64,000 nucleotides of DNA, from IMG/VR virus record IMGVR_UViG_3300044957_000763, positions 310,001-374,000 of that record, one strand, 5' to 3'. Under the pieces are notes generated by a model, which made no database searches, was not told the origin of the DNA, and worked only from the letters and a program-made list of their open reading frames with translations. The position numbers and the translations under genes were made by a program. How positions within the stretch are numbered: position 1 is the first letter of the stretch; the number at the start of each line of letters is the position of its first letter. Positions 42,469 to 59,572 of the stretch are shown here, piece after piece.

Positions 42469-42482
42469 TCGAAACAACCATC

Positions 42483-44734: not shown

Positions 44735-44780
44735 ACTTCACCCGGTCCCGGAACCGAAGTTCCTAGACAAACAAAACATC

Positions 44781-44990: not shown

Positions 44991-44997
44991 ACAAAAC

Positions 44998-45165: not shown

Positions 45166-45207
45166 CGCCCGGCCCCGGACACGACCTTACATTCGACTGA
45201 CTACCAC

Positions 45208-45967: not shown

Positions 45968-45979
45968 GAATTCAACATC

Positions 45980-46423: not shown

Positions 46424-46466
46424 CCCAACCGGTCCCGGAGCTACGGCTCCGGGACTTTTTTCATTC

Positions 46467-46871
46467 ATGCCCAAACGCAGTTACGAAAACATGAAACAGG
46501 GCGGGAACGAAGAACCTATGATGACACAGATACTCAGTCAAACAACACCGTGGCTCGGTACTCAGCAAGCTGAGGACTATGTAGAAGGCAAGGAAGACGT
46601 TACCGACTTCAAAGTTATCACACTATTCGGTGAGACCAAGCTGCGCCGATTTGGAGTGATTGTCGAGATGTACGACAAGAAAGAATATGGCCGAGCTAAT
46701 CGAGCATACCTGAGCCAGTTTACAGAAGCAGAGCGCAAGGTCATGTCCGCATGGTATCTCAAGATTTATGCTTGGTTCATGCGTTCTGGCATACCGAGAG
46801 GTGGTGTGCGAATGTCCATCAAGACTTACCACACGCTTTGCAGGTTCGCGGACTTTTTCGCGACCATTTGA
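46467..46871 (+). CDS. hypothetical protein
   Basis: Motif +37. Confidence 0.7.
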   Translation: MPKRSYENMKQGGNEEPMMTQILSQTTPWLGTQQAEDYVEGKEDVTDFKVITLFGETKLRRFGVIVEMYDKKEYGRANRAYLSQFTEAERKVMSAWYLKIYAWFMRSGIPRGGVRMSIKTYHTLCRFADFFATI

Positions 46872-46913
46872 AATCCCGGTCCCGGAACTGAAGTTTCGGG
46901 ACTTTCATCAATC

Positions 46914-47456
46914 ATGCCATCCACAACCGAACGAACCCGAGAGGAACAAAAGCGTGGTGAAAACACACTACTTGTTGCTCTTTATCGCGCAAATGACCAT
47001 TACTCTTTGATGTATATGGACAGCCGCGAGTTGCGTGTGCAGTGTGAAGGTCAATTCAGGTCTTTCTTAAGTGATGGACCAGTGCTGGTGATGTACGATA
47101 ACGGCCATCTCATTCCTATCTTGTGGTCGGAATCTAAGTACCAAGAATCAGCAGGTAGCGCAATGGATAGACTGATTGCCCAGGCGACCAAAATCCAAAC
47201 GCATTTTACCATGCGCGGTTTTTCGCCCTTTGTAGCTTTCTGCGATGGTGCTGCATTTGGGATAGACCATGCAAGACGTGATATTAAACTCCACTTTCGA
47301 GAAGGGTTTGAGTCTACGTTGCCTTGCGAGTATGGCAATGCCTTTATCAAAGCCACACCTTGGAGCATCGAAGAAATCACAGAAATCCTAATCGAAATCA
47401 TTGACCGGCGGCTCAAAATCGCCGGTCCCGGAAACAAGAAATCAATCGGAAACTAA
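46914..47456 (+). CDS. hypothetical protein, possible PD-(D/E)xK-like fold
   Basis: SDG...WSESKYQ...GSAMDR; motif +37. Confidence 0.65.
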   Translation: MPSTTERTREEQKRGENTLLVALYRANDHYSLMYMDSRELRVQCEGQFRSFLSDGPVLVMYDNGHLIPILWSESKYQESAGSAMDRLIAQATKIQTHFTMRGFSPFVAFCDGAAFGIDHARRDIKLHFREGFESTLPCEYGNAFIKATPWSIEEITEILIEIIDRRLKIAGPGNKKSIGN

Positions 47457-47460
47457 CATC

Positions 47461-48369
47461 ATGTTCAACGCACAAGTCGACCAGAACAAGCCTGACCACT
47501 TCATGGCTCAGTTGCCACTATCGGCACTCGAAGCTAACCTGATTGCAAGTGATGTACAGCGCCAACCCGACTTTCGAAGGGCGAAAGAAATCACCGATGA
47601 GCTGCTCGCTGGTGGAGAAATCCACGGTGTCTTAACCGCCGAGTATCGCCCAGGAACTCTAGAATTCCGAAACGGAAAGCTCAAAATTCTCAAACCCGCA
47701 GAGCTGTTTGACGCGATGACGCGACGCAACGGTGGTGTTGGAGCGGTTCGAATCGACCCGGTAACGCAAGGTAACAAGACTGCGTGGGTACACTTCATCC
47801 CGTATGTTGACCGACGCACATCGGAGTATCGCATCGCTGAATGGAACAAGGCTCGAACTATGGACCCAGGAGTCATCCAGTTCGGTTCGTTAGAGCCAGC
47901 CGACGTATGGGCACGAGACGTGTTTGAGGCTTCTAAGTTTCTTGTGAAAGACGAGAATGTTTGCTTAGAAAGCAGGGGCAAGGGCGATAAGTTCCACTAC
48001 AACGCTATTGCAAACTTGCTCAAGCTGTTCTTGCCATTGTCTCGACAATACGGCTGGAATACAGCGCAAGCAGCGGATGCTGTGGACTATGTCCTGTCAC
48101 GGTTGTTTACCTTGGAGAACTCACTCTTGAAGAAGCCAAACATCATGAGGGCAGTAAGCACTGCTATCGTTTGGTTCATTGAAGAGAACCCAACCAACTG
48201 GAAGAGTCAGCTTCGAGTCTCGATTCCAAAGCTGAAGCTGAATGTCAACAATCCAGCATGGGAAGGTATCCTGTACTTCAATCGCGAAGGCAAGCCGCCT
48301 ACTATGGTCACCGGCGCCGGTAACGTACTATCGGCATCCCGAACTATCCGCCAGCAACTTGGCGGATAG
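47461..48369 (+). CDS. DndB/DGQHR-like (ParB-fold) protein, divergent
   Basis: VQR..D.RRAKEI, LFDAMTR at the DGQHR-equivalent position, W.GIL; motif +38. Confidence 0.5.
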   Translation: MFNAQVDQNKPDHFMAQLPLSALEANLIASDVQRQPDFRRAKEITDELLAGGEIHGVLTAEYRPGTLEFRNGKLKILKPAELFDAMTRRNGGVGAVRIDPVTQGNKTAWVHFIPYVDRRTSEYRIAEWNKARTMDPGVIQFGSLEPADVWARDVFEASKFLVKDENVCLESRGKGDKFHYNAIANLLKLFLPLSRQYGWNTAQAADAVDYVLSRLFTLENSLLKKPNIMRAVSTAIVWFIEENPTNWKSQLRVSIPKLKLNVNNPAWEGILYFNREGKPPTMVTGAGNVLSASRTIRQQLGG

Positions 48370-48421
48370 GGTAACGCGAGCCACCGGTCCCGGAACTGAA
48401 GTTTCGGGCAAACTAAGAATC

Positions 48422-49156
48422 ATGGACACCATCGGTCACATCCTAACTAACTTCGGACCTGCAATAGTCATCGCCACCACCTACGAAAATGGTGCCACGG
48501 CTGTTGTCATTAAATGCGTAGACGGTTCGCCACTCTGTATCTTGTCGGTCAATCTCGGAGACGTCAAGCTGAAGGATGGCGAGTTCCTCGCCAAGACCTG
48601 GAGCGAGAATGAAGATATTGCAAAATCTGCCTTGGATTCCGGCTTGTTTGAAGACACGGGTCGGCGGATTCCCACCGGATGGGTTGAGGCACAAGTATGG
48701 CGCTTCAAAGTGCCTGTGCCGATGCAGTGCTACGATGCCTGTATCGTGCAGGATGCCTGCAACCCAAGCGGAGTCCTGAACTCATTCATCAACCTGTGGA
48801 AGATGGAGAACTGGGGACCAAGCAACCCGATTGCAGTCATGTATGCCAGCAAGCTGTGCGACATGAGCGGAACCCGTGACGATAAAACGTCGCTGAATCT
48901 CGACTGGAAAGCTCTACTGCCCCTTGCAGAGTCCGTACTGGCAGAGATGAACGGTCTCGACACTTACGATAAGGCGAATCTTGAATCGTTCAAGAGTTGG
49001 TGCGCTACGCTTGCTGCATGGACACGATGCTGCAACTCCCAAGTATCGAACGTAGTCTTCCGACGCGTTGTGGAACTCGCTGACTGGACTGGGAAGGAAA
49101 CCCAACGCGAAGGCTTTGTAAACCGCTATTGCCGAGATATGGCAGTCAGCGGTTAA
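48422..49156 (+). CDS. two-domain hypothetical protein (DUF4313-like N-terminus)
   Basis: LSVNL...K.WSENE...GLFEDTG; motif +37. Confidence 0.7.
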   Translation: MDTIGHILTNFGPAIVIATTYENGATAVVIKCVDGSPLCILSVNLGDVKLKDGEFLAKTWSENEDIAKSALDSGLFEDTGRRIPTGWVEAQVWRFKVPVPMQCYDACIVQDACNPSGVLNSFINLWKMENWGPSNPIAVMYASKLCDMSGTRDDKTSLNLDWKALLPLAESVLAEMNGLDTYDKANLESFKSWCATLAAWTRCCNSQVSNVVFRRVVELADWTGKETQREGFVNRYCRDMAVSG

Positions 49157-49203
49157 ACCGAATACCGGTCCCGGAGCTGTAAGCTCCGGGGCTTTTTTCA
49201 TTC

Positions 49204-49581
49204 ATGAGCGAAGAACTCGATATGATGAAAGCCATGCTTGGTTGTCACTTGCTACGGGCACCAGGTCAAATCTTGTTGCAACGCGGAAGAGAAACCAAAG
49301 AAGGTGGTCACATCACGGTTGTAGGCGCCATTCTGCATACTCCAGAACCGCTATTCAGCCCGCAAGCTGTAGAAATGGGTGCTGTGCATGAGCTGATTAT
49401 TGGCGAAATGTTGATTAGACCGTTAGGAAAGTTCGCAAGTACCAGATACAAAGGGCGCGGTATTGCGGCTTGCCTGACCGGCGATGCTATGTTCCCATAT
49501 GGTCACGAAGTAGTGACACTGGATAACGGATACCCTGACCACATCCGGCCCCGGAACCCGGAACCCACAACTTCAAGTTAA
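49204..49581 (+). CDS. hypothetical protein
   Basis: Motif +38. Confidence 0.7.
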   Translation: MSEELDMMKAMLGCHLLRAPGQILLQRGRETKEGGHITVVGAILHTPEPLFSPQAVEMGAVHELIIGEMLIRPLGKFASTRYKGRGIAACLTGDAMFPYGHEVVTLDNGYPDHIRPRNPEPTTSS

Positions 49582-49583
49582 TA

Positions 49584-49937
49584 ATGGACGTAAAAGACGC
49601 CAACAAAATTATGCTGTCTGCTCGACAAGTCGCCAAAGACGAAATCGAACATCAGTTCCAAACGGCCATTGACGCAATCGAGACTGCGGTTTCAACAGCC
49701 GCTAAAAAAGGTCTCGGCCGCGTCAAAGTGTTTTTCAACACTAATCCCAAGGTAAGAGGTTGCGCCCGACACTGGTTGGGCGAACTTAGTGTCATCAAGT
49801 GGGATGGTGGAGAGCGGACTGAAATCAGTGAACAATGTGTCGAACTTGCCAGGAGAATAAGCACAAAAGGCTTTCAGGCTTCAATTGAGTTCGATGGTAT
49901 TGACATCATCTGGGAGAACGCCGGTCCCGGAACCTAG
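49584..49937 (+). CDS. hypothetical protein
   Basis: Motif +38. Confidence 0.7.
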   Translation: MDVKDANKIMLSARQVAKDEIEHQFQTAIDAIETAVSTAAKKGLGRVKVFFNTNPKVRGCARHWLGELSVIKWDGGERTEISEQCVELARRISTKGFQASIEFDGIDIIWENAGPGT

Positions 49938-49959
49938 GTTCCGGGGTTTCCCAAACATC

Positions 49960-50304
49960 ATGGACGCATTCACCCAAGCATACATCGAAGCACTACTGTG
50001 GTCGTCTTCTGGCGACCATGGGTCACCACTGGGGAAGGAAGCCAACGTCAGCGAAATCAGCCCGGAACTGATGTCTCGGATTGAATCTGATTGCAAGAAC
50101 TTTCAGCTATTCAACTCCGAGCACTTCGATGGAGACTACAAACAAGCTGGCCACGACTTCGCACTCACGAGAAACCGAGTCGGTACCGGCTTCTGGGACG
50201 GAGACTGGCCAGAACCTGCTGCCACGCTACTCACCGATGCGGCACGTGCCGTTGGTGAACTCGAGTTGTACCGTGGCGACGATGGTCTCATCTACGCACT
50301 GTAA
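49960..50304 (+). CDS. conserved phage protein (AGHDF.LTRN..G.GFWD type)
   Basis: Motif +38. Confidence 0.8.
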   Translation: MDAFTQAYIEALLWSSSGDHGSPLGKEANVSEISPELMSRIESDCKNFQLFNSEHFDGDYKQAGHDFALTRNRVGTGFWDGDWPEPAATLLTDAARAVGELELYRGDDGLIYAL

Positions 50305-50347
50305 ACGAACCGGCCCCGGAGTTTGAACTCCGGGGCTTTTTTTATTC

Positions 50348-51040
50348 ATGTTCCACACATTCACTCAAAAACACGACGATGAGCGAGGGTATTCGGGCTG
50401 GGTGCTCGATGCTAAGCCGTATTTCGACCCCATGAATGGGGCAGGTGTGGCACACGATGTGCTCGAAGAGATGCCGCACGGTGGAGAACAGCCACACGAC
50501 GAACTGATTGCACTTGGTGCTGCGATTTTCGGCCGAGCTAGTCTTTCTGGTGCATTCAACAATCGACCCGCTTCCGAGGTGCTTTCATATGAGTTTAGCG
50601 AACTGTTTCGCCATGCTTTCAATGAAGACCACTATTGGCTTAGTCCAGCACCCAAAACATTAAGACTAGACCAGGGTCGCTATGGTGAAGACTACGAACG
50701 AGAAGAGGCTATTATTCAAGCCGTCGGACCACTTGTACTCGAATACATCGACAAGTACGGTGCGGATGAGTTTAGCGACAATGAAGACAATCTCGAAGAG
50801 GCACGGGCGTGGATACCACATGCTCAAAACTGGCTTCGAATCGGCTTCAGACGGGCACGCCGACGCTTTTACCCACACATGGACGGGTGCGATGTTGCGT
50901 TCATGTTTGAGCGCATTGAGCGAGAAGTAGAAGCACTTAAAGGCGTAGAACTTGGCGACCGATTGACCATACAAGTCAAGTACCAACGCAACGACCTTAA
51001 ACTATGGCATACGCCATACTACGAACTGCCTCAGTGGTAA
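50348..51040 (+). CDS. hypothetical protein (AHD.LE)
   Basis: Motif +37. Confidence 0.8.
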   Translation: MFHTFTQKHDDERGYSGWVLDAKPYFDPMNGAGVAHDVLEEMPHGGEQPHDELIALGAAIFGRASLSGAFNNRPASEVLSYEFSELFRHAFNEDHYWLSPAPKTLRLDQGRYGEDYEREEAIIQAVGPLVLEYIDKYGADEFSDNEDNLEEARAWIPHAQNWLRIGFRRARRRFYPHMDGCDVAFMFERIEREVEALKGVELGDRLTIQVKYQRNDLKLWHTPYYELPQW

Positions 51041-51084
51041 AACCACCGGTCCCGGAGCTACGGCTTCGGGACTTTTTTCATTTC

Positions 51085-51366
51085 ATGATACACGGTTTCG
51101 ACTGGACACACACACCGAACAAAGAAGACCTCGAACGCGATGAGCAAGCACCGGAAACGTACAGATACTGGAAGAAGTTCCGGTATATTAGAACCGCAAA
51201 GAGATTCGGTATAATCGTACACACCGAGGTAATCACCGTATACGTTCGCACTGAAAGGATTTTCCATACTTTGCTTCGGTGGTGGAATGGAAGCAGTACG
51301 TCGAGCGCACCCCTGAACCCGGGCTTAACGTGGCACTACGCCCCGGCCCCGGATTCGATTTATTGA
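51085..51366 (+). CDS. hypothetical protein
   Basis: Motif +38. Confidence 0.65.
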   Translation: MIHGFDWTHTPNKEDLERDEQAPETYRYWKKFRYIRTAKRFGIIVHTEVITVYVRTERIFHTLLRWWNGSSTSSAPLNPGLTWHYAPAPDSIY

Positions 51367-51382
51367 TTCAATCTAAAACATC

Positions 51383-51787
51383 ATGGGAAGCATCAAACTT
51401 TCACCAAAACACGGGGTAAACCCAAGCATCGCCACTTGCTTCTGGTGCGGAGAAGCCACTAACTCGCTAGTACTGTTTGGCAGATTACCAAACGACCAAG
51501 AAGCGGGCATGTATTGTGGTGCTCTGGATTACGAACCTTGCGACAAGTGCAAGGAAAACTGGTCTCAGGGTATCTTGCTCATCGAGGCTGGTATGTCTCC
51601 ACAATCGGAGAACCAGCCCGAAATGCAGAAGGGCGTATACCCTACTGGTCGATATCTAGTCTTGAAGCCTGAAGCAGTAAACCGTATCTTTACCCCAGAT
51701 GCAGCGGCCGAAATACTGAAGCATCGAAAATGTTTCATGGACTTCGAGACCTTCGGTCAGTTCGTCCCGGTCCCGGAACCCCGATAG
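51383..51787 (+). CDS. zinc-binding phage protein (SPKHGVNP...CFWCG...CDKC)
   Basis: Motif +39. Confidence 0.8.
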   Translation: MGSIKLSPKHGVNPSIATCFWCGEATNSLVLFGRLPNDQEAGMYCGALDYEPCDKCKENWSQGILLIEAGMSPQSENQPEMQKGVYPTGRYLVLKPEAVNRIFTPDAAAEILKHRKCFMDFETFGQFVPVPEPR

Positions 51788-51805
51788 ACGGGGTTCCTTC
51801 AAATC

Positions 51806-52132
51806 ATGGACAAAGTGCTCTACAACCTGCACAAAGCCCGCCCTGGTGTTGGCGGCTTTTACTGCAATTGCTGCAACCCGGCATTTGGTAACTTTAAGGG
51901 TCCGAACTCTCGTTGCCATCGCCAAGCCGCCAAGCGTGCTTTTCGTCGCTCCGAGAAGCAGAAGAACCACAATGCTGGTGCCATTTATCTACACCAGCGG
52001 TTTATTGAGTCTATCCATGAATACAACAATTGTATGATTGATGTTGGTATGGAGCACAAGTGCCTAGAATACAATGTGCTTTTTGGTGTGATTACTAAGC
52101 CGGTCCCGGAACCCGACTTCATCGCTTTCTAA
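51806..52132 (+). CDS. hypothetical protein (CNCC)
   Basis: Motif +38. Confidence 0.65.
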   Translation: MDKVLYNLHKARPGVGGFYCNCCNPAFGNFKGPNSRCHRQAAKRAFRRSEKQKNHNAGAIYLHQRFIESIHEYNNCMIDVGMEHKCLEYNVLFGVITKPVPEPDFIAF

Positions 52133-52139
52133 ACTTACA

Positions 52140-52469
52140 ATGAACATCACAATGAGTCCAATGAATTTCATCGAATTCGACACGACGCCGGCAAACGAAT
52201 CGTGCGTTAGTGTCAGCAAGACCGAGGAATACATGCCTGCAATGCGGGCTGAAGCCAATCGTATGAAGGAGTTGCTTGAAAAGCGGTTCCCTGATGTGAA
52301 TGGGTACTTCACAATCAAGAGCATTACACACGACTTTGGTTCGTACCTCGAGATGCGCTTCTACTACGAGGACAACGACGCAGGCATTAAGGAGATGCAA
52401 CACGTCGAAGCGAACTACCCTCAAACGTGGTTGGACGCCGAACCCGTTTTGCTGTACGCCACGACTTAA
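52140..52469 (+). CDS. conserved phage protein (HDFGSY.E type)
   Basis: Motif +39. Confidence 0.75.
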   Translation: MNITMSPMNFIEFDTTPANESCVSVSKTEEYMPAMRAEANRMKELLEKRFPDVNGYFTIKSITHDFGSYLEMRFYYEDNDAGIKEMQHVEANYPQTWLDAEPVLLYATT

Positions 52470-52514
52470 AACCCAACCGGCCCCGGAGCTACCGCTCCGG
52501 GGCTTTTTTCATTC

Positions 52515-52835
52515 GTGCTAAAACTTCCAAGCAACATCCCTCTGCTCTATGCCACTAAAAAAGTGGATGCTGACCACAAGACCATCCACGCTCGCCTGTT
52601 TGCTCTCGGTTGTAACGCAACCTGGTTGATTGCGGAGTATGACCCCAAGAAAAAACTGGCTTACGGCTATTGTGACCTATACGGTCAAGGTCGAGAAGGT
52701 GGTGCTGAATGGGGGTACGTCTCCATCGAAGAACTGGAATCGCTCAAGTTCATGGGCATTCCCCGTGTCGAGGTTGACGCGCACTTCACACCCAAGCCGT
52801 TCAAGGATTGCGTGCGACCTGACGGTCGCATCTAA
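52515..52835 (+). CDS. DUF2958-like protein
   Basis: ATWLIAEYD...YG.CDL...EWGYVSIEEL...E.D.HF; GTG at motif +37. Confidence 0.75.
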   Translation: MLKLPSNIPLLYATKKVDADHKTIHARLFALGCNATWLIAEYDPKKKLAYGYCDLYGQGREGGAEWGYVSIEELESLKFMGIPRVEVDAHFTPKPFKDCVRPDGRI

Positions 52836-52881
52836 ACAAACCCCGGTCCCGGAACCAAAGTTTCGGGAACTTTTTTCATTC

Positions 52882-53052
52882 ATGCCGAAAACAAAGAAAC
52901 GCTGGTATATCAAGTTTCCGCTCGATGCTTACGCACTTGGACCCATTGAGGCAGATAGCGAAGCCGATGCGCGGCGCTGGGCACGAGAGTTCTCCGGCGT
53001 CAAGCGATTGCCTGCCGGGTTCGAGTGTTGGGAAACCGGTCCCGGATTTTAA
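52882..53052 (+). CDS. hypothetical protein
   Basis: Motif +38. Confidence 0.65.
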   Translation: MPKTKKRWYIKFPLDAYALGPIEADSEADARRWAREFSGVKRLPAGFECWETGPGF

Positions 53053-53215
53053 TGGCTAATCACAAACGAAAGAAATGCAAGCGGTCGACCCGTACCATTA
53101 CAGGTAACCGGTCTAACATGACGGGCAACAGCGAAAGCAAAGCATACGGTCACCACAAGGCTGGAGTGCGATGCGCTCGAAACGTCCGCAACAGACTCAC
53201 ACAGGAGGAACTATA

Positions 53216-53401
53216 ATGCCAGTTGAAATCGGACTTGCTGATGCTATCGAAGAGGTGCTGCGCACTGGTGCTGCCGACATCTACTACGATTCCTCGTTCG
53301 ATACCACGGAGGACATCGCAGAAGGCGCAACACACTCCAAAGGTGTCCAAAGACACCAGGAAGCACTGCAACGTCTCAAAGAGGCGTATAACAGCCAATA
53401 A
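53216..53401 (+). CDS. hypothetical protein
   Basis: GGAGG SD; TAATG overlap. Confidence 0.65.
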   Translation: MPVEIGLADAIEEVLRTGAADIYYDSSFDTTEDIAEGATHSKGVQRHQEALQRLKEAYNSQ

Positions 53402-53443
53402 GAGCCGGCCCCGGAAATCCGGGGTTGGCCAATCTATTCAACC

Positions 53444-53698
53444 ATGCCGAAACCAAGAAAGCCAATTCGTGTAAGTCACACACCACCACTCCGACCAGGG
53501 TGGTATGCGTATAGCCACTGTGGTGGCGAGTTTGAAGCAGTCAAGCTGGCACAAGCTGACGTAGACGACGCACAAAGCCGCTATAAGTTATCCGTATTGC
53601 TCGACTTACCTTTTGTCGATGTCTGGAGCACGCGAAAGCTGAAGAAGCGCGAGTATGATTGCAACCGGTCCCAGAATCACTCAACTTGTGCGGCATAA
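53444..53698 (+). CDS. hypothetical protein
   Basis: Motif +38. Confidence 0.65.
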   Translation: MPKPRKPIRVSHTPPLRPGWYAYSHCGGEFEAVKLAQADVDDAQSRYKLSVLLDLPFVDVWSTRKLKKREYDCNRSQNHSTCAA

Positions 53699-53704
53699 CC
53701 CATC

Positions 53705-53875
53705 ATGGTAATCAGCTTCAAGTGCCCACATTGCAAGGAACAAGTGCCACGTGACATCAAGCAAAGAACGCGTGGAACGCGATATGCCATTCTGTTTGAC
53801 TGCCCTCGATGCCGGAGAACAATTCACATCGAGGGAATCGCCCAACAATCGCCGCCTAAGGTTGTAAAACTGTAG
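53705..53875 (+). CDS. 56-aa zinc-ribbon protein
   Basis: Manual ORF with CPHC...CPRC; variant motif CGGTCCCAGA 39 nt upstream. Confidence 0.65.
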   Translation: MVISFKCPHCKEQVPRDIKQRTRGTRYAILFDCPRCRRTIHIEGIAQQSPPKVVKL

Positions 53876-53914
53876 GCGGCCCCGGAAAACAAAAACCCAG
53901 AAAACAAAAACATC

Positions 53915-54265
53915 ATGCGAAAAGCATTAACGCTCATCGAGCTACTTATCGCCACATTCATCGCCGCTATCTTGATTACGGTGATACTTGCCGGAATTCG
54001 TGGTTGCACCACCCAAGGTGTCGCTGCAGAAGACTCTATGCGGGAGTATGTAAGCAGGCTGTATCCTGGCCGCGAGGTCATTGGTGTTGCTTGCACCAAC
54101 ATGGACACTGACGGCGACGGTTACATCAGTTGCACCGCAACCATCGACATCGACAACGGACCGAATGTCGTGGAAAGACAAATCAATGCCCAGTGTGCAA
54201 CAGGACTCTTGTCCTTCAACAGTGGTTGTAAGGCTGCGATTCCTCAAGCATATCCACAACAGTAA
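53915..54265 (+). CDS. prepilin-type N-terminal cleavage/methylation domain protein
   Basis: MRKA|LTLIELLIA (E+5), hydrophobic helix, Cys residues, DTDGDG; motif +38. Confidence 0.7.
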   Translation: MRKALTLIELLIATFIAAILITVILAGIRGCTTQGVAAEDSMREYVSRLYPGREVIGVACTNMDTDGDGYISCTATIDIDNGPNVVERQINAQCATGLLSFNSGCKAAIPQAYPQQ

Positions 54266-54308
54266 CCTACCGGCCCCGGAGTTCCGTGCTCCGGGGCTTT
54301 TCTCATTC

Positions 54309-54503
54309 ATGCCAAGTTGCGAACGCTGCCAAAAGCCAACAAACGTCACAATTATGTCCATGTTCAATACCCAAACCATTTGCATGGACTGCAAGGACTC
54401 GGAGAAGAAACATCCGAAGTACAAAGAGGCACAGCAAGCCGAACTTGAAGCCGTAAAAGCCAATAACTACAACTTCCAAGGAATCGGATTTCCGGGCAAC
54501 TGA
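54309..54503 (+). CDS. small zinc-finger phage protein (C.RC...MSMFNT..IC..C)
   Basis: Motif +38. Confidence 0.75.
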   Translation: MPSCERCQKPTNVTIMSMFNTQTICMDCKDSEKKHPKYKEAQQAELEAVKANNYNFQGIGFPGN

Positions 54504-54544
54504 ACCCGGCCCCGGAAGCCCAAATCAGGGCAACATTACACATC

Positions 54545-54697
54545 ATGAGCAAGAAGCAAAAAGCACAAAAGCCCGCCTACACCCCGGTGCCCTTCACACG
54601 GGCACACTCCAAGCCACATCGACTTGAGGAGAACAGTCGTGCCCGACGAAAGCGCGAAGAACGCGATGCCAAGAACGGCAACTGGAGACAGGATTGA
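54545..54697 (+). CDS. 50-aa basic peptide
   Basis: Manual ORF at motif +38; TTGA overlap with next gene. Confidence 0.6.
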   Translation: MSKKQKAQKPAYTPVPFTRAHSKPHRLEENSRARRKREERDAKNGNWRQD

Positions 54698-55065
54698 TAA
54701 CTGAGTTCAAAGGTGAAAGGGGACAATTCTCAGTATGCCATGATGGTGAAACGCGGAGTCTTCAGGCTATCGTGTATGCATTGGAACCACCGGATGAGTT
54801 CGGAGTCAAACACAAGGAACCAATTGACTGGCGATTAAGTGAGAAAAATCATTCACCGACCGGCCTTGAATGGGGATATGGTGGCTCCGGACCAAGCCAA
54901 CTTGCATGGTGTCTGCTTCGTGAATGTGGACTGACAAAACCCCAGACAGAAGCACTCTATATGCGATTCAAAGCAGATGTAATAGCTAACCTGCCGCGAG
55001 AAGGCTTTACCCTGACAAAGAAACAAGTGATGGACTGGGTCAAGAAAAGCGGCCCCGGAAAGTAA
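54694..55065 (+). CDS. DUF6166-like protein
   Basis: HSPTGLEWGYGGSGPSQLA. Confidence 0.75.
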   Translation: MITEFKGERGQFSVCHDGETRSLQAIVYALEPPDEFGVKHKEPIDWRLSEKNHSPTGLEWGYGGSGPSQLAWCLLRECGLTKPQTEALYMRFKADVIANLPREGFTLTKKQVMDWVKKSGPGK

Positions 55066-55086
55066 ACCGTGGCATACTCATCAAGC

Positions 55087-55362
55087 ATGCCACGATACAC
55101 ACTCGACACACCAAGTCAGCACTTGCTGAACCAGAAGGATAAGGACATCACCTACTACGGTATCCTGCTGGACGGCAGGGTGCAGATTACTGGTGCCCTG
55201 TTTAATAGCAAGGCACAAGTTGTCAAGGCTATCAAAAAGCTCAACAATGCCATCGAGCAAGGCTTGCCCAAGGTAGAGGTCGAAATTCATCGCGGAATGT
55301 ACTTGTGGGACTTGCAAGAGCACAATCAAGGCATACCCGTAAAAGGTGTGGAAGTGTCCTGA
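55087..55362 (+). CDS. hypothetical protein
   Basis: Motif +37. Confidence 0.65.
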   Translation: MPRYTLDTPSQHLLNQKDKDITYYGILLDGRVQITGALFNSKAQVVKAIKKLNNAIEQGLPKVEVEIHRGMYLWDLQEHNQGIPVKGVEVS

Positions 55363-55430
55363 CTGTGGACACTCTGTCACCAAATGAAACAATCGGTCCC
55401 GGAGCTTAGGCTCCGGGACTTTTTTGCTTT

Positions 55431-55730
55431 ATGAGAAACATCCTCACGAGAAAAGTCTTGTTTCCAGTATGGTTGCTGTGCTTACTGGTCATGGCTGATA
55501 CAGCATGGACTATTTGGGTTGTCCATCGCGAACTAGCTATCGAAGCCAATCCACTGATGGCACACCTGGTCAATTACAATGTGCCAGCTTTTGTTGCCAT
55601 CAAAACTAGTGTTGTGCTTGCGTTTGCCGTAATGCTCGAACTCATACCCGACCAACGACGCAAGAACAGATTCGCACATACAGCATTTGGATTGTTTGTT
55701 GTGCTATACTGTATCTGGAGTATTTGTTAA
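55431..55730 (+). CDS. DUF5658-like membrane protein
   Basis: D...T......EANPLM......F...K; motif +37. Confidence 0.7.
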   Translation: MRNILTRKVLFPVWLLCLLVMADTAWTIWVVHRELAIEANPLMAHLVNYNVPAFVAIKTSVVLAFAVMLELIPDQRRKNRFAHTAFGLFVVLYCIWSIC

Positions 55731-55774
55731 AAATTCGGCCCCGGAATCCCAAAACAACACAAACCCAAAAGAGT

Positions 55775-55984
55775 ATGAAGAAAATTCAACGCATCGCCAC
55801 TACCCTTGGTATTCCGGCGAATGAAATCACCAAAGCCGAGCGTAAAGCTATTCAAAAAGCCAACTCGGCCACTGAAGTTTGTCGAATACTTGGGGTCGAA
55901 GTCGCCGGTAATGTACAATATGTGCAAGCCGCTATGAAGCGACCGAAGAAAAAGAAAACGCAGGTGTATGCGTATGCCGCGTAA
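55775..55984 (+). CDS. small basic protein
   Basis: Motif +39. Confidence 0.65.
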   Translation: MKKIQRIATTLGIPANEITKAERKAIQKANSATEVCRILGVEVAGNVQYVQAAMKRPKKKKTQVYAYAA

Positions 55985-56170
55985 AGGAGGACACAAATGA
56001 CACTACAAAGCTCAGGATGTATGTTCATTCTTGGAATGATATTCTGTGGAATTTTCTGGGGTGGACAAGGCGTGTTTTGGTGGGTGATTGCAAGCATCAT
56101 CATAACCATTTTGGAATCCGATAAAATCTAAGCGACCCCGGAACCACCAAGACCACTGAATCAACAAATC

Positions 56171-56545
56171 ATGTGGAAAACACAGCAACAAGCCGACACC
56201 TTCAACCGATGCCTTGATGGCGCAAAGCAGACAGGATTCAACGGTTGTATCACTTATGCCAACAAAGCAGACGCTGACAAGGCTTGCGCCACGCTCGTGC
56301 CGACGATTGATGAGGCGTATGAACTAACAGCCCATCAGGGCAAAGTCTATGCCGAAGTCAACCAAGAGTACATGAGCGAACCACGTTTGCGAGTTACAGG
56401 GTTTCTCGAAGCTATCATCGACACCAACCCGGTGAGTGCCGAGTTTGAAGCCGAGGGCGAGGATGGTGAGCAGTATCAGATACACTTTGAGTCTGGCAAA
56501 TGGGTGCTACTTCAACGCCCTTACAACTTCACAGAGGTAGCCTAA
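56171..56545 (+). CDS. hypothetical protein
   Basis: Variant motif +38. Confidence 0.75.
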   Translation: MWKTQQQADTFNRCLDGAKQTGFNGCITYANKADADKACATLVPTIDEAYELTAHQGKVYAEVNQEYMSEPRLRVTGFLEAIIDTNPVSAEFEAEGEDGEQYQIHFESGKWVLLQRPYNFTEVA

Positions 56546-56586
56546 GATGCGGTCCCGGAACTTCGGTTCCGGGACTTTTTTTATTC

Positions 56587-56751
56587 ATGCCAACAGCAAA
56601 AACACTCAGGGAACTTGGCGAAATCATCACCAAAAACTTTTCGCAGGAAAGCATTCGCGAAGGGTACCAAATCGACCCCGCCGACTTGGAAGAAGTTGGT
56701 CGCCAAGCATTACTCTTTGGCGACATTCAACAAGACGGGACACTCAATTAG
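56587..56751 (+). CDS. hypothetical protein
   Basis: Motif +37. Confidence 0.65.
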   Translation: MPTAKTLRELGEIITKNFSQESIREGYQIDPADLEEVGRQALLFGDIQQDGTLN

Positions 56752-56794
56752 GCGGTCCCGGAACCCGGACTAATTCGGACTCCCAACAAGCATC

Positions 56795-57175
56795 ATGAAG
56801 ACATGGCTAAGTGACGAGGACGCCAAGGCAATCTGCCGACATCGTGCGAAGTCAAACGATTACATTCGACGTCAATTGTCCTCGGGCACCCAAGTACCAC
56901 GAGCAACTTGGATGCAATGGGCACACGAATACGATGCCGTCCGTACAATCCTTCAGACACTTGCTAGAGTCTGTGACGGCGCAAAGTCGCACGATGGATG
57001 CGGGTTTAACAAACACGATTCAAGGAAAGGGAAGCAACTTGCTTATCAATCCGAACTTACGAACGAGGAATTTTGGATTGGAGTCAGAATCGTCCGCAAG
57101 TATCACCAACAAATAAACCCGGCACTAATGGCGTGGATACCCCGGTCCCGGAAGTCCAATAGTCCGGGTTCCTAA
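56795..57175 (+). CDS. hypothetical protein (CDGA...DG.GFNK.D...KYH.Q type)
   Basis: Motif +42. Confidence 0.75.
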   Translation: MKTWLSDEDAKAICRHRAKSNDYIRRQLSSGTQVPRATWMQWAHEYDAVRTILQTLARVCDGAKSHDGCGFNKHDSRKGKQLAYQSELTNEEFWIGVRIVRKYHQQINPALMAWIPRSRKSNSPGS

Positions 57176-57180
57176 CTCAC

Positions 57181-57498
57181 ATGAGTGAAACAGAAAACTC
57201 AGCCGACCGCTTCATCAAGTGGTTGGACTCAATCGCCAATTCAACGCTCGGCAAAATCGGGGTGTCAAAAGGATTCCATATCTGGCACTCAGGTGGTGGT
57301 TGCCATCACTTCCGAAAGGACGCCGAGAACGGGTGCTACGTTCTTGTGTGCCACGAGGGGGAGATTCCTGAAACCGACCCAGGTATTTGGATGGTGGGAA
57401 CCTACGACGCCGAAGGCGAGGAAATCCACGTTCTTGACCTCGAATACACGCTTGAGGAAGCGTTGGACTCGGCAAGCAAGTTGCTTGCCGAAGTCTGA
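57181..57498 (+). CDS. hypothetical protein (HSGGGC)
   Basis: Motif +38. Confidence 0.75.
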   Translation: MSETENSADRFIKWLDSIANSTLGKIGVSKGFHIWHSGGGCHHFRKDAENGCYVLVCHEGEIPETDPGIWMVGTYDAEGEEIHVLDLEYTLEEALDSASKLLAEV

Positions 57499-57560
57499 AA
57501 ACCACCGGTCCCGGAACCCCGAAAAGCGGGGTTCCCTAGCAATGTCCTAAGGAAAGGAAA

Positions 57561-57869
57561 ATGAGTCGACACACAACCAACACCAGCAAGTTCGAAATCG
57601 TACTCGGAGTAGACCGACCGCTCAATCATGTGTTCGCGTCGGTTTTCGACCGAAAAGGCGAAGATGCCAAGGGTTTTGACCCGTTCTCGTGGTTCGCTCC
57701 GACTTCCGCCGGCGTCGAAGATGCTATCAAGGCGGTTGAAGGATTTACCAAGTCAAAGTTGCCCGAAAGCATCAGGGAGGCACTGCTGGCTGACCTGATG
57801 GCTATGCAGGAAGGTCAAAGCATCAACTATTCCAAGACCCACGGTGCTGCCCTGTTCGGGTTCGCATAA
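57561..57869 (+). CDS. hypothetical protein (G.DRPL..F type)
   Basis: AGGAAAGG SD. Confidence 0.75.
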   Translation: MSRHTTNTSKFEIVLGVDRPLNHVFASVFDRKGEDAKGFDPFSWFAPTSAGVEDAIKAVEGFTKSKLPESIREALLADLMAMQEGQSINYSKTHGAALFGFA

Positions 57870-57936
57870 CCCTCCGGTCCCGGAACCCCGATAACGGGGT
57901 TCCTCTACTTCATCACCACGAAAGGTGAAACGAATC

Positions 57937-58224
57937 ATGGAAGATAACAAGACAGGTTTTCAACTATGCCTGGAGCGTGCCGCCGTCAAGGTAGCATGGG
58001 GCATTCTCGTCACTACTATGGCACTCCCCACTGCATGGAAGTGGGCGGTCGCCATCGACCCTGATGGCATCTTGGGCGTCACGATTGCGCTTGGCTTCCT
58101 TGGAAGCGTTGCGCTAACGCCACTGATGCTTGGATGCGGGTTCGCATCCGATGACTTGCGCAAGGCACGACGTATATGGCGTGCTTCACGACCAAGCCGG
58201 TCCCGGAACCACCGAATCGGCTAA
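57937..58224 (+). CDS. small membrane protein
   Basis: Two hydrophobic segments. Confidence 0.65.
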   Translation: MEDNKTGFQLCLERAAVKVAWGILVTTMALPTAWKWAVAIDPDGILGVTIALGFLGSVALTPLMLGCGFASDDLRKARRIWRASRPSRSRNHRIG

Positions 58225-58277
58225 ACCACTTATCATCGCCAAGCAAGAAAGCAAAGCGATAAAGGAGCAACAACACA

Positions 58278-58475
58278 ATGATGAAGGTTCTTAAATTTGA
58301 CGCAAAGACTGGTGTAGCCACCATCGAACTTCAACTCGACATGAAAGGTCGCCCGTCGACCTCTGGCAAGACCACCGTTCACTTCAGCACGAACGGAAAC
58401 CAGCGCGTTGATGAAATCCAGGTGGGCGGTCGCCCGTTGGTCATCGGCATCAACGCCTACACTCCCAAGGGGTAA
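58278..58475 (+). CDS. conserved small protein (PS.SGKT...ST.GN type)
   Basis: AAGGAG SD. Confidence 0.75.
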   Translation: MMKVLKFDAKTGVATIELQLDMKGRPSTSGKTTVHFSTNGNQRVDEIQVGGRPLVIGINAYTPKG

Positions 58476-58549
58476 CACCTATATCGCCGGTCCCGGAACC
58501 CGCCTAGTGCGGGTTCCCCTACAATGTCCCAAGGGACAGGAGCAACACG

Positions 58550-58789
58550 ATGCCAAAGCAAGACACAAGTATCGTCAATGCCGTTGCACAATACACGCAA
58601 CGCCAGACTCGTCAGCAGGTCAAAAGGTTGCTGATTCGTGCCGATAAACTCAACGGCGACCGGCTTGCCCGCATCCCTGGTGCCGGGGATGAGTTACGCA
58701 AGCTCTTGGACAAAGTCGCAACCTTAGACCAAAAGGCTGCCCATGATTTTGCCGTGAGCATCGGGTGGGGCGACCGAATCCCCGCATAA
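58550..58789 (+). CDS. hypothetical protein
   Basis: AGGAG SD in the extended leader. Confidence 0.7.
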   Translation: MPKQDTSIVNAVAQYTQRQTRQQVKRLLIRADKLNGDRLARIPGAGDELRKLLDKVATLDQKAAHDFAVSIGWGDRIPA

Positions 58790-58854
58790 ATCGCCGGTCC
58801 CGGAACCCCGCTAGGCGGGGTTCCCTAGCAATGTCCCAAGGGACAGGAGGCACC

Positions 58855-59070
58855 ATGAAGGTAGTTGATATTAGCCTGACCGCAACGTCGGAAGGCACGC
58901 TTGTCAATCTCCGCAACGCTCTCGGCCAACGCGTTGCGAAAACCCACTTGCCAGGATGCGGGGACTTTAACGTCCTCGGTTGCGATGTCATGGTCAAGAT
59001 GCCGGCAAACCTCGTCCGCTCGCTTCTGAAAGGGAAGGGTGCATACATCACGACCAACAAGACCGCCTAA
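58855..59070 (+). CDS. hypothetical protein
   Basis: GGAGG SD; in-frame upstream ATG at 58831. Confidence 0.7.
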   Translation: MKVVDISLTATSEGTLVNLRNALGQRVAKTHLPGCGDFNVLGCDVMVKMPANLVRSLLKGKGAYITTNKTA

Positions 59071-59137
59071 TCGCCGGTCCCGGAACCCCGCCTAGCGGGG
59101 TTCCCTACCAATGTCCCAAGGGACAGGAGGAACAAGC

Positions 59138-59242
59138 ATGAAACTCGCCATCTCCCTCGTCGTAGTCTACGGACTGGTCTTTCACACGACCATGACCGTT
59201 GTCATCGTTGTCGCGTTAGCGGTAATCAAGGCGATGAAATAA
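59138..59242 (+). CDS. 34-aa hydrophobic peptide
   Basis: GGAGG SD; in-frame upstream ATG at 59111. Confidence 0.55.
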   Translation: MKLAISLVVVYGLVFHTTMTVVIVVALAVIKAMK

Positions 59243-59572
59243 CGCGGCCCCGGAACTCAACCGCGTCCGCCTACCTAAAACATGGCAAGCAAGGTGCAAT
59301 CATGAAGTATTGAACGGAACGAAATTTGGAACCGACAAGCCGGGGGTGGTGCCCCGGCTCCACAAGCCATGCCGGCCCCGGACATCGAAGATGCCGGCGG
59401 TGATTAACTCCCGCCACAAACTCTTTGGTCGCCGCGGCCTGGCTGGCGACCAGCTTTGCGTTTCTCTAAGGATAGGGGGTGGCATCAAGGTTTAGGTACC
59501 ATATCTGAAATAGTAACGTCCGTATACGGGATGTTATTTTTTCTCTGTGAGCCACATAGGGGGGTGGACCTA

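What the first reader, a model, noticed from the sequence alone, without database searches (positions are those of the whole stretch)
57504..59137. Last units share a longer ~55-nt leader in front of unrelated genes
Seen: 58486, 58793 and 59073 read GCCGGTCCCGGAACCC..hairpin..GGGTTCCC(C)TA(N)CAATGTCCCAAGGGACAGGAG, and 57504 is a close variant. Each has a second mini-hairpin (TGTCCC-AA-GGGACA), an ATG at motif+36 and then an SD. In two cases that ATG is in frame and adds MSQGTGGT to the protein. The downstream ORFs are unrelated. Inference: a complete expression leader was recently copied in front of different genes, the best sign of cassette-like accretion at the right end. It could also simply be the strongest or earliest promoter form.
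Basis: partly seen in the sequence, partly recalled or inferred. Interest (0 to 1): 0.66.

Follow-up and report, generated by a model that had tools for sequence, protein, structure and literature searches.

The report
Conserved leadered promoter units, huge phage
The shared ~55-nt "leader" is real, but it is an old, conserved variant of a regulatory unit that stands before nearly every gene of a 49-kb block in a 479-kb lake-water phage, not a sign of fresh gene accretion at the block's right end.

Summary
Units at 58487, 58794 and 59074 share motif, stem-loop, CAATG, TGTCCCAAGGGACA and GGAG; 57505 is a decayed variant; the ORFs behind them are unrelated.

The context changes the reading. The window lies in a 478,840-bp IMG/VR virus record. 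The motif CCGG(C/T)CCCGGA occurs about 90 times, only in one 49-kb block and only on the + strand. In 79 of 91 copies an ATG/GTG without a Shine-Dalgarno (SD) sequence follows 37-41 nt later. About half the units also form a GC hairpin, and 19 of these add a T-run.

The last units are "leadered" versions. The canonical +38 position is kept, a short stem-loop starts there, then comes an SD and the real ATG.

Diverged relatives (50-83% aa identity) carry the same last genes in the same order, with the same leader before the 58550 and 58855 orthologues. Only the 59074 copy is lineage-specific; relatives have a standard unit there. The 57561 gene with its unit occupies a different slot in each of three genomes.

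Best reading: composite promoter/hairpin units like the PeSLs (promoter-early stem-loops) of T4-type phages, with transcription starting near +38. That gives leaderless mRNAs in most units and a 5'-terminal stem-loop plus SD in the last ones. The start site is inferred; no RNA data exist.

The parts
10263..59545 (+). One-strand array of about 88 small genes, about 95% coding, GC 0.51 against 0.44 for the rest of the genome. Nearly every gene is preceded by CCGG(C/T)CCCGGA.
57505..57560 (+). Decayed leadered unit: motif 57505-57517, stem-loop 1 57513-57535, ATG-TCC-TAA 57542-57550, purine run 57551-57560.
57561..57869 (+). ORF of 102 aa with no family match. Homologues are 58-71% identical. It sits in different array slots in L247 and L249.
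57874..57936 (+). Leadered unit of another sequence: motif, stem-loop 1 (57882-57903), TCA at the +38 position, then stem-loop UCACC-ACGAAA-GGUGA and AACGAATC before the ATG. The leader is conserved in L247, L249 and L252.
57937..58224 (+). ORF of 95 aa with hydrophobic stretches. Conserved in all relatives examined.
58197..58277 (+). Leadered unit: motif, ATCA at the +38 position, stem-loop AUCGC..GCGAU, AAGGAG, then ATG at 58278. The L249/L252 orthologue has a TGTCCCA-AGCAA-TGGGAC stem-loop instead.
58278..58475 (+). ORF of 65 aa, 83% identical in relatives. Small viral family of unknown function.
58487..58549 (+). Leader copy 1: motif 58487-58499, stem-loop 1 58495-58517, upstream ATG 58524-58526 (out of frame), stem-loop 2 58525-58538, GGAG 58539-58542.
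58550..58789 (+). ORF of 79 aa. The N-terminus MP(K/Q) is conserved at this ATG in four genomes.
58794..58854 (+). Leader copy 2: motif 58794-58806, stem-loop 1 58802-58824, upstream ATG 58831-58833 (in frame), stem-loop 2 58832-58845, GGAGG 58846-58850.
58855..59070 (+). ORF of 71 aa. The N-terminus MKV(V/T)DI is conserved at this ATG.
59074..59137 (+). Leader copy 3, specific to this lineage: motif 59074-59086, stem-loop 1 59082-59104, upstream ATG 59111-59113 (in frame), stem-loop 2 59112-59125, GGAGG 59126-59130.
59138..59242 (+). ORF of 34 aa, a hydrophobic peptide. The L247 orthologue has the same length and starts at the canonical +38 ATG of a standard unit. The gene is 5'-truncated in L252.
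59244..59545 (+). End of the array: two gene-less motif copies (59244, 59372), non-coding sequence conserved in relatives, and a hairpin plus T-run at 59512-59545.
6232..7089 (+). Sigma-70-family gene (regions 2 and 4; ECF/SigI-like), 3 kb left of the array. One of three such genes in the genome and a candidate reader of the motif. This link is an inference.

Best explanation
The four units belong to a family of about 90 composite regulatory units. These punctuate a 49-kb, single-strand, ORFan-rich block of a 479-kb virus record from lake water.

Standard unit: the 11-13-nt motif CCGG(C/T)CCCGGA(A/G)C; then about 25 nt that either fold with the motif into a GC hairpin (19 with a T-run, i.e. 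terminator-like) or are A-rich; then ..ATC|ATG at 38 +/-1 nt, with no Shine-Dalgarno (SD) sequence.

Inferred mechanism: the motif is the -35-type element of a phage-specific promoter. Its GC core spans -36 to -29 if the A of the ATG is +1. Transcription would then start at or next to that A, so most genes of the block would be made from leaderless mRNAs. The hairpins would stop or attenuate upstream transcripts.

The last six units (57505 to 59074) are leadered versions. The motif and stem-loop 1 are kept and the +38 position is kept (TCA / CAATG). The transcript would begin with a short 5'-terminal stem-loop (UGUCC-CAAG-GGACA in three of them), run on into a purine-rich SD and reach the real ATG 19-42 nt further on. 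Such a stem-loop is the classic way to protect a 5' end (established knowledge, e.g. the ompA leader).

Shown here: the leaders are old and travel with their genes, because orthologous genes in diverged relatives have them. Copies drift and are occasionally overwritten from a neighbour (59074 in this genome; the two L247 copies are 96% alike). Whole unit-plus-gene modules occasionally change slot. This matches what is described for PeSL elements (promoter-early stem-loops) of T4-type phages.

Inferred only: the promoter function, the start site at +38, and the role of the 5' stem-loop.

The confidence of 0.6 is a blend: about 0.85 that these are conserved variants of the array's regulatory unit, and about 0.55 for the mechanism.
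For: Distribution of the motif:
- 65 hits against 1.4 expected, 63 of them on the + strand.
- Found only between 320 and 369.5 kb of the genome; it is the commonest 11-mer there.

Spacing and start context:
- A start codon lies 37-41 nt from the motif in 79 of 91 copies.
- The -3 to -1 consensus is ATC (52, 56 and 60 of 79). This is absent from gene starts outside the array.

SD use:
- GGAG/GAGG lies 4-10 nt before the start in 3 of 68 standard units against 7 of 15 leadered units (p = 1.4e-4).
- Genes outside the array show an SD peak at -14 to -9.

Hairpins:
- Unit hairpins are the top + strand terminator hits (23 found, 12.3 expected). There is no excess of sigma-70 promoters (9 against 8.1).
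- A T-run hairpin ending 6-8 nt before an ATG leaves no room for a leader.
- 10 of 15 leadered units have a hairpin starting 0-3 nt after +38. Shuffles gave a mean of 2.2 and a maximum of 7, and 0 of 500 reached 10.
- Stem-loop 1 is 99.3% paired, and its two inner pairs show 4 and 3 pair types (0 of 500 shuffles).

Relatives:
- Same motif or the co-varying variant CCGGCCTCGGA, same 38-39 nt spacing, syntenic genes.
- Leaders are conserved at orthologous genes.
- The 59138 orthologue in L247 starts exactly at the +38 ATG of a standard unit.
- Slot changes and a slot replacement occur.
- An unrelated lineage (L258) has a different motif at the same 36-39 nt from the ATG, sometimes followed by TATAAT.

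Other:
- Three sigma-70-family genes are present, one beside the array. No RNA polymerase core domains were found.
- PeSL properties are taken from PMC2839356 and PMC4122927.
Against: - No RNA data exist for this element: all 18 runs found are DNA. The start site, promoter activity and termination are therefore unproven.
- There is no conserved -10 element. The -12 to -6 region is T-rich in terminator units and A-rich in the others, which is odd for a sigma-70-family promoter.
- The factor that reads the motif is unknown.
- Two GTG-start standard units carry GGAG at 8 nt, so some genes are probably also translated from read-through transcripts.
- In L247 the purine block lies 12-14 nt from the ATG, which is far for an SD.
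- The three TGTCCC copies are not independent data points in the hairpin and SD counts.
- The 'virus' label rests on IMG/VR and the terminal repeats. The Pfam models for terminase, capsid and gp23 gave no hit.
Confidence: 0.6

Rival explanations
1. One reading: the leader was copied recently in front of newly acquired, unrelated genes, and the array grows by cassette accretion at its right end.
For: Three copies within 650 bp share an exact 21-mer. The ORFs are unrelated. The 59074 copy is indeed lineage-specific.
Against: The last five genes, the two terminal gene-less motif copies and the right flank are collinear in L247, and partly in L249/L252/L255. The 58550 and 58855 orthologues already carry the leader. 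The variable spots lie further in, at 55.0-56.7 kb and in the slot at 57.5 kb.
Confidence: 0.07
2. The motif and hairpins act on RNA. The block is transcribed as long polycistronic RNAs, and a phage factor binds or cuts at the motif, as a punctuation or processing signal or a translational operator. Stem-loop 2 would be a protein-binding site that controls translation of the last genes.
For: Strict strand bias and fixed distance to the ATG. UUCG/UACG-type loops and G-U pairs in the hairpins: 55 G-U against no A-C in the predicted stems. Stem-loop 2 abuts the SD. Some standard units have an SD, which implies read-through mRNAs.
Against: Nineteen units are canonical hairpin plus T-run terminators, which would end a polycistronic RNA unless transcription restarts. 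A third or more of the units have the motif without any hairpin. Strong hairpins 6-8 nt before an SD-less ATG would block ribosome loading on a leadered RNA. The 38-nt geometry fits a -35 element. The stem-loops that follow +38 have at least six unrelated sequences, which argues against one specific binding protein.
Confidence: 0.2
3. TGTCCC-AA-GGGACA is a DNA operator for a dimeric regulator that sits on the start site of the last three genes.
For: It is a 14-bp near-palindrome placed at +2 to +15 of the presumed start. There are only three copies in 479 kb.
Against: In relatives the half-sites are kept but their spacing and inner sequence change: loops CAAG, AAAG, CAGG and ACACACA; inner stems are inserted in L249 9340 and L255 5364. 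This fits a hairpin, not a fixed-spacing operator. Other leadered units have unrelated hairpins at the same place.
Confidence: 0.07
4. The ATG at +37 is the true (leaderless) start. The 'leader' then encodes an N-terminal extension (MSQGTGGT) or a short upstream ORF.
For: The ATG sits exactly where standard units have their start codon. It is kept in W, L247, L249, L252 and one L255 unit. It is in frame in W at 58831 and 59111, and in L247 and L252 for the 58855 orthologue.
Against: The distance from the upstream ATG to the real ATG is 26/31/26/26 nt for the 58550 orthologues (never in frame) and 24/30/26/27 nt for the 58855 orthologues. It gives MS-stop at 57542. Protein N-termini align from the downstream ATG (MPK.., MKV.DI..). 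The 59138 orthologue in L247 lacks the extension.
Confidence: 0.1

Closest known systems
PeSLs (promoter-early stem-loops) of T4-type phages (Arbiol et al. 2010, PMC2839356; Comeau et al. 2014, PMC4122927)
   Same: Short composite intergenic units that join a promoter and a GC-rich stem-loop acting as terminator or attenuator. The stem-loop lies between or over the promoter boxes. There are tens of copies, clustered in plastic regions in front of ORFans. They act as homology patches for insertion, deletion, replacement and movement of unit-plus-gene modules. Sub-classes differ in stem-loop position.
   Different: The motif here is GC-rich and not a sigma-70 -35/-10 pair. Density is far higher: about 90 units in one 49-kb block, before almost every gene. 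Most units place the ATG 38 nt from the motif with no SD, whereas PeSLs end in an SD. The genome is not shown to be T4-like. Promoter and terminator activity and mini-circles are untested.
Start-associated sequences (SAS/ESAS) of Cluster K mycobacteriophages (Pope et al. 2011; cited from memory)
   Same: A conserved 13-nt motif at a fixed short distance before the start codons of a subset of genes on the coding strand. Its function is not settled.
   Different: SAS lies 3-8 nt before the start and contains the SD. There are about 10-20 copies. It has no hairpin partner.
Stoperators of Cluster A mycobacteriophages (cited from memory)
   Same: An asymmetric 13-nt site, with tens of copies in short intergenic gaps, oriented with the direction of transcription.
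   Different: Stoperators are repressor-binding sites that block elongation in a lysogen. They have no fixed distance to start codons and no hairpin or terminator component.
Integron gene-cassette arrays (attC sites)
   Same: A one-directional row of small unrelated ORFs separated by repeated structured sites, with cassette gain, loss and reshuffling.
   Different: attC sites are 57-141-nt imperfect palindromes downstream of each ORF. They are recombined by an adjacent IntI integrase, and the cassettes are promoterless. Here the repeat is 11-13 nt, tied to the next start codon, and no integrase was seen among the families listed by the array's Pfam scan (25 of 36 matched families shown). New cassettes do not pile up at one end.
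5'-terminal stem-loop stabilisers of bacterial and phage mRNAs (e.g. the ompA 5' UTR; cited from memory)
   Same: A short hairpin within 0-3 nt of the presumed 5' end, followed by the ribosome-binding site.
   Different: Here the 5' end is inferred, not mapped, and stabilisation is untested.

Membership tests
PeSL-type composite promoter/terminator cassette | Intergenic unit that combines a conserved promoter motif with a stable stem-loop | tested here: met
   The motif plus a hairpin is present in about 55 of 91 units. Stem-loop 1 of the last units co-varies. The promoter role of the motif is inferred only.
PeSL-type composite promoter/terminator cassette | Sigma-70-like -35/-10 consensus with an AT-rich upstream region | tested here: not met
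   There is no excess of sigma-70-like sites (9 against 8.1 expected) and none lies at the units. The motif is GC-rich, and no -10 consensus was found.
PeSL-type composite promoter/terminator cassette | Clustered in plastic regions, upstream of ORFans | tested here: met
   All copies lie in one 49-kb block. The Pfam scan of the 88 array proteins listed hits for roughly a fifth of them (25 of 36 matched families shown).
PeSL-type composite promoter/terminator cassette | Differences between relatives are insertions, deletions, replacements or moves of unit-plus-gene modules bounded by the units | tested here: met
   Gene 57561 sits in three slots. The slot at 57.5 kb has three unrelated occupants. 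The 55.1-55.7 kb genes are replaced in L247. Breakpoints were not mapped to the base.
PeSL-type composite promoter/terminator cassette | Promoter and terminator activity shown; mini-circles formed | not testable with these tools
   No RNA runs were found. The DNA runs hold one identical strain as short contigs.
PeSL-type composite promoter/terminator cassette | Host genome is a T4-type myovirus | tested here: inconclusive
   The Pfam model Gp23 gave no hit, but its control rang nowhere. No terminase or capsid hit was obtained.
Integron cassette array | Adjacent tyrosine-recombinase integrase and attC-type sites downstream of each ORF | tested here: not met
   No recombinase family appears among the array's listed Pfam hits (25 of 36 families shown) or in the scanned flanking ORFs. 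The repeat is 11-13 nt and is tied to the next ATG.
Intrinsic terminator (stem-loop 1 of the last units) | GC hairpin directly followed by a T-run | tested here: not met
   The hairpins at 57513, 57882, 58495, 58802 and 59082 are followed by C(C)TA.., not by T-runs. No terminator-like site lies between 56576 and 59512. Nineteen other units of the array do meet this feature.
Shine-Dalgarno-led translation start (last units) | GGAG-type purine block 4-10 nt before the conserved start codon | tested here: met
   The spacers are 7, 4 and 7 nt in this window, and protein N-termini align from these ATGs. In L247 the spacer is 12-14 nt, so the SD is weaker there.
Leaderless mRNA (standard units) | Transcript 5' end at the A of the start codon; no SD | tested here: inconclusive
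   Absence of an SD was shown (3 of 68), and so was the fixed 38-nt spacing to the motif. The 5' end itself is not mapped.

The most novel reading that the evidence does not exclude
A lineage of huge lake-water phages runs a block of about 90 genes as a dedicated 'leaderless regulon'. A GC-rich 11-nt element is read by a phage-encoded factor, perhaps the ECF/SigI-like sigma gene beside the block. It fires transcription exactly at the start codon of each gene and doubles as the 5' arm of the previous gene's terminator. A minority of genes, including the last five, have switched to a 5'-stem-loop plus SD leader. A second, unrelated lineage (L258) shows the same 36-39-nt geometry with a different motif, so the design may be widespread in large phages. 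The units would also serve as recombination linkers.
Probability: 0.4. Interest if true: 0.7.

Novelty: new variant of a known kind. Interest (0 to 1): 0.45.

Why it matters
Huge phages carry long runs of small unknown genes, and how these are expressed and exchanged is largely unknown. This array gives a compact, testable grammar: motif, optional terminator hairpin, start codon at +38.

The leadered units of this finding serve as an internal control that points to where transcription starts. If confirmed, one short motif would let annotators call gene starts and early or host-takeover regulons in a whole phage lineage. It would also provide a minimal promoter/terminator part and extend the PeSL idea of regulatory cassettes as recombination linkers beyond T4-type phages.

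For the scan itself, the lesson is that near-identical leaders within one genome need not be recent. Orthologues in relatives show that they are old.

Tried and rejected
- Exact-pattern scans for the motif and for the leader core in viral and metagenome contigs gave only single chance matches. None of those loci holds the array motif, and they were not studied further. One search failed and was repeated.
- The search for related loci with single proteins found nothing in IMG/VR.
- blastn of the region against GenBank phages gave no match.
- Sequencing runs: 18 DNA runs from lake water and none from RNA. Laying four of them gave only identical sequence in short, low-depth contigs. Their loose ends are cross-mapping between array units, not recombinants. 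There is therefore no strain-level variation and no expression data.
- Rfam found only the tRNA-Gln.
- Pfam, PHROGs and NCBIfam found nothing for the ORFs behind the leaders. The Atlas places the 65-aa protein in small viral clusters of unknown function.
- An ECF-type reading of GGAAC as the -35 'AAC' element was considered and dropped. Positions 12-13 of the motif vary (AC, GC, AA, AT, TT), and the implied start site would fall inside the ORFs.
- The operator reading of the palindrome and the N-terminal-extension reading were weighed and ranked low (see rival explanations).
- RNAalifold on the conserved non-coding tail was inconclusive: three sequences, three compensated pairs.
Full report
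OBSERVATION

The sequence is as described. GCCGGTCCCGGAAC begins at 58486, 58793 and 59073. A 9-10-bp stem-loop (GGAACCC(C)G..C(G)GGGTTCC) follows, then (C)CTA(N)CAATG, then TGTCCCAAGGGACA and GGAG. The 21-mer CAATGTCCCAAGGGACAGGAG is present exactly three times against 0 expected. The 14-mer palindrome occurs nowhere else in the 478,840-bp genome. The unit at 57505 is a diverged copy.

RNAfold gives stem-loop 1 with 9-10 pairs, and stem-loop 2 as 5 pairs with a 4-nt loop. The upstream ATG lies 37 nt from the first C of CCGG. It is in frame with the real start at 58831 and 59111, out of frame at 58524, and followed by a stop after two codons at 57542. The ORFs behind the units show no similarity to each other and match no Pfam or PHROG family.

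CONTEXT

The window is part of a single-contig IMG/VR virus record of 478,840 bp with direct terminal repeats, from lake-water metagenomes. I could not confirm phage hallmark genes with Pfam models, so the virus label rests on IMG/VR.

The motif CCGG(C/T)CCCGGA is the commonest 11-mer of the genome. It occurs only between 320 and 369.5 kb (window 10.3-59.4 kb). At two mismatches or fewer there are 63 hits on the + strand and 2 on the other strand, against 1.4 expected. That block is about 95% coding on one strand, has GC 0.51 against 0.44 elsewhere, and holds about 88 mostly small genes. The Pfam scan of those 88 proteins lists hits for roughly a fifth of them (25 of 36 matched families shown): WGR, ATP-dependent ligase, MoxR AAA+/VWA, HATPase, a methyltransferase and several DUFs.

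THE STANDARD UNIT

Of 91 motif copies, 79 have an ATG (72) or GTG (7) at 37-41 nt, mostly 38 or 39. The only other conserved positions are ATC just before the start codon (52, 56 and 60 of 79). Gene starts outside the block do not show this.

The rest of the unit comes in three forms:
- The motif is the 5' arm of an 11-bp hairpin with a UUCG/UACG-type loop and a T-run (19 units).
- The same kind of hairpin without a T-run.
- No hairpin, with an A-rich spacer instead.

When the motif has T at position 5, the 3' arm has A; when it has C, the arm has G. These hairpins head the + strand terminator-like hits (23 found, 12.3 expected), whereas sigma-70-like promoters are not enriched (9 against 8.1).

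Standard units almost never have an SD: 3 of 68, two of them tandem paralogues. Genes elsewhere in the genome do show an SD peak at -14 to -9.

A terminator that ends 6-8 nt before an SD-less ATG leaves no room for a leader. If the A of the ATG is +1, the GC core of the motif spans -36 to -29. I therefore infer that the motif is the -35-type element of a phage-specific promoter and that most genes of the block are expressed from leaderless mRNAs. This is inference. No RNA run holds the sequence.

THE LAST UNITS IN THAT LIGHT

Fifteen units have their real start further downstream. They include all six units from 57505 to 59074. In these units:
- The canonical position keeps a TCA/CAATG-like sequence.
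- In 10 of 15 a hairpin starts 0-3 nt after +38. Shuffles gave a mean of 2.2 and a maximum of 7, and 0 of 500 reached 10. The three TGTCCC copies count as three here.
- GGAG/GAGG lies 4-10 nt before the real start in 7 of 15, against 3 of 68 standard units (p = 1.4e-4).

The hairpins have at least six unrelated sequences: UAAUGC.., UCGGUU.., GCCCG.., GCCAC.., UCACC.., AUCGC.. and UGUCC... What is shared is therefore an architecture: 5'-terminal stem-loop, SD, ATG. Similar pairs exist elsewhere, for example at 28357 and 42219.

RELATIVES

Homologues of the MoxR-like protein at 64-89% identity lie in syntenic arrays. These carry the same motif, or CCGGCCTCGGA in the more distant L124 and L247. 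Spacing is again 38-39 nt and the hairpin arms co-vary with the motif.

Homologues of the 57561 and 58278 proteins led to five loci: L247 (a 278-kb scaffold), L249, L252, L255 and L256. BLASTP maps window 48-59.3 kb and the right flank 60.5-63.9 kb collinearly onto L247, and the array part onto L249.

Genes 57937, 58278, 58550 and 58855 follow each other in every relative that covers them. L247 also has 59138 (same 34-aa length), both terminal gene-less motif copies and the conserved non-coding tail.

The leader is present at the 58550 and 58855 orthologues in L247, L249 and L252:
- L247: CAATGTCCAAAGGGACAAGGAAC
- L249: (C/T)AATGTCCCAAGGGACAAAGGAG
- L252: the same with CAGG or CAAG loops
- L255: GUCC-ACACACA-GGAC, and UGUC-A-CCGC-CGAACA-GCGG-GACA

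The stem base is thus kept while the loop length and the inner stem change. This fits a hairpin and argues against a fixed-spacing DNA operator. The 57937 leader stem (UCACC..GGUGA) and the 58197 leader are likewise conserved.

Stem-loop 1, compared over 16 distinct copies from four genomes, is 99.3% paired. Its two inner pairs occur as CG/GC/AU/UA and GC/CG/UA (0 of 500 shuffles reach the covariation score). The outer pairs were fixed by my selection pattern; the inner ones were not.

HOW OLD ARE THE COPIES

Among W, L249 and L252, each leader is closest to its orthologue (86-95%), not to its neighbour (78-86%). In L247 the two copies are 96% identical to each other and 56-74% to their orthologues. 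So most of the similarity is inherited, with occasional homogenisation.

The 59074 copy is the exception. L247 has a standard unit there (..GGGGTTCCGACTAATC|ATG, offset 38). L252 has a standard-type unit with the very same stem-loop 1 as this window, but a 5'-truncated gene. The about 27-nt leader was therefore added in this lineage. It was most likely copied from the 58794 unit 280 bp upstream, with which it shares ..GGTTCCCTA(G/C)CAATGTCCCAAGGGACAGGAGG.

Gene 57561 behaves as a module. It lies after the 57181 gene here, before its orthologue in L247, and between the 54694 and 55724 orthologues in L249, where it keeps the half-leader CAATGTCCCAAGGAG. The slot it fills here holds unrelated genes in L249/L252 and in L247. 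Other replacements lie at 55.1-56.7 kb.

WHICH ATG

The distance from the +37 ATG to the real start is 26/31/26/26 nt for the 58550 orthologues and 24/30/26/27 nt for the 58855 orthologues. Protein N-termini align from the downstream ATG. The MSQGTGGT extension is therefore not a conserved part of these proteins. Some initiation at a 5'-terminal AUG cannot be excluded.

COMPARISON WITH KNOWN SYSTEMS

The closest described elements are the PeSLs of T4-type phages. These are small composite promoter plus stem-loop cassettes, about 50 per genome, in hyperplastic regions before ORFans. They have sub-classes by stem-loop position and act as homology patches for modular shuffling (PMC2839356, PMC4122927).

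The present units work like that in every respect I could test. They fail the sequence definition, because there are no sigma-70 boxes. They are much denser, and they mostly lack the SD that ends a PeSL. Integron cassettes, Cluster K SAS and Cluster A stoperators share single features only.

No paper in the library holds the motif in a phage context. A different large-phage scaffold (L258) has its own intergenic motif, GGGGTTAGCC(C). It lies 36-39 nt before SD-less ATGs, sometimes inside terminator loops and sometimes followed by TATAAT. This supports the promoter geometry by analogy.

The reader of the motif is unknown. The genome has three sigma-70-family genes, one of them (ECF/SigI-like) 3 kb left of the block, and no detectable RNA polymerase core domains.

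VERDICT

- The interpretation as recent accretion at the right end is refuted by synteny.
- One of the three copies is a recent local copy, and unit-plus-gene modules do move.
- The units are best read as leadered members of a PeSL-like family of promoter/hairpin units.

Confidence is about 0.85 that they are conserved variants of the array's regulatory unit. It is about 0.55 for the specific mechanism: start at +38, leaderless standard units, and a 5' stem-loop plus SD in the last units.

No operator restriction was triggered.

Noticed in passing
window 59244-59545: Behind the last gene lie two gene-less motif copies (59244, 59372). There is a three-codon ORF, ATGAAGTATTGA (MKY-stop; MKF-stop in L247), behind AAGGTG. 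About 150 nt of non-coding sequence is nearly identical in L247 and L252, and it ends in a hairpin plus T-run at 59512-59545. This could be a small RNA made from the last motif. The alignment fold is inconclusive.
   Followed up: partly
window 59563-59646 and 60257-60340: An 84-nt direct repeat (81% identical) brackets the minus-strand ORF 59633-60205 (190 aa, no family). L247 has a single copy of the repeat and no such ORF, so this looks like an insertion that duplicated or recombined the site.
   Followed up: partly
L258 (223-kb scaffold of another lineage), whole locus: This locus has its own intergenic motif, GGGGTTAGCC(C), 14 times on the coding strand. In about 9 cases an ATG lies 36-39 nt from the motif start. 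Some copies lie in the loop of a terminator hairpin and some are followed by TATAAT.
   Followed up: partly
window 10263-59384 (whole array): The motif variants are regional. CCGGCCCCGG lies left of 41.5 kb, and CCGGTCCCGG dominates to the right. L124 and L247 use CCGGCCTCGG. The 3' arms of the hairpins change with the variant.
   Followed up: partly
window 515-1517: A 78-nt (26-aa) tandem repeat, about 13 copies at about 71% matches, lies inside ORF 380-1714. The repeat family starts upstream of the window (genome 305-311 kb).
   Followed up: no
L121 3692-4321, L122 3565-4101, L126 833-1474: Relatives carry a GIY-YIG/NUMOD3 homing-endonuclease-like gene next to the ligase gene. This window lacks it: the ligase gene at 17988-19136 is followed directly by the unit at 19142.
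   Followed up: no
window 17259-17948 / 37345-38028 and 45417-45692 / 45689-45967: These are the only clear paralogue pairs inside the array (60% and 53% aa identity). The second pair is a tandem duplicate whose units share GGAG and a GTG start.
   Followed up: no
genome 1-45 and 478,787-478,825; tRNA-like T-arms genome-wide: Short repeats of about 40 nt (7 copies) mark the genome ends. The tRNA T-arm word GGATTCGAACC occurs 12 times, which suggests many tRNA genes. One of them, tRNA-Gln, lies at window 9134-9203.
   Followed up: no
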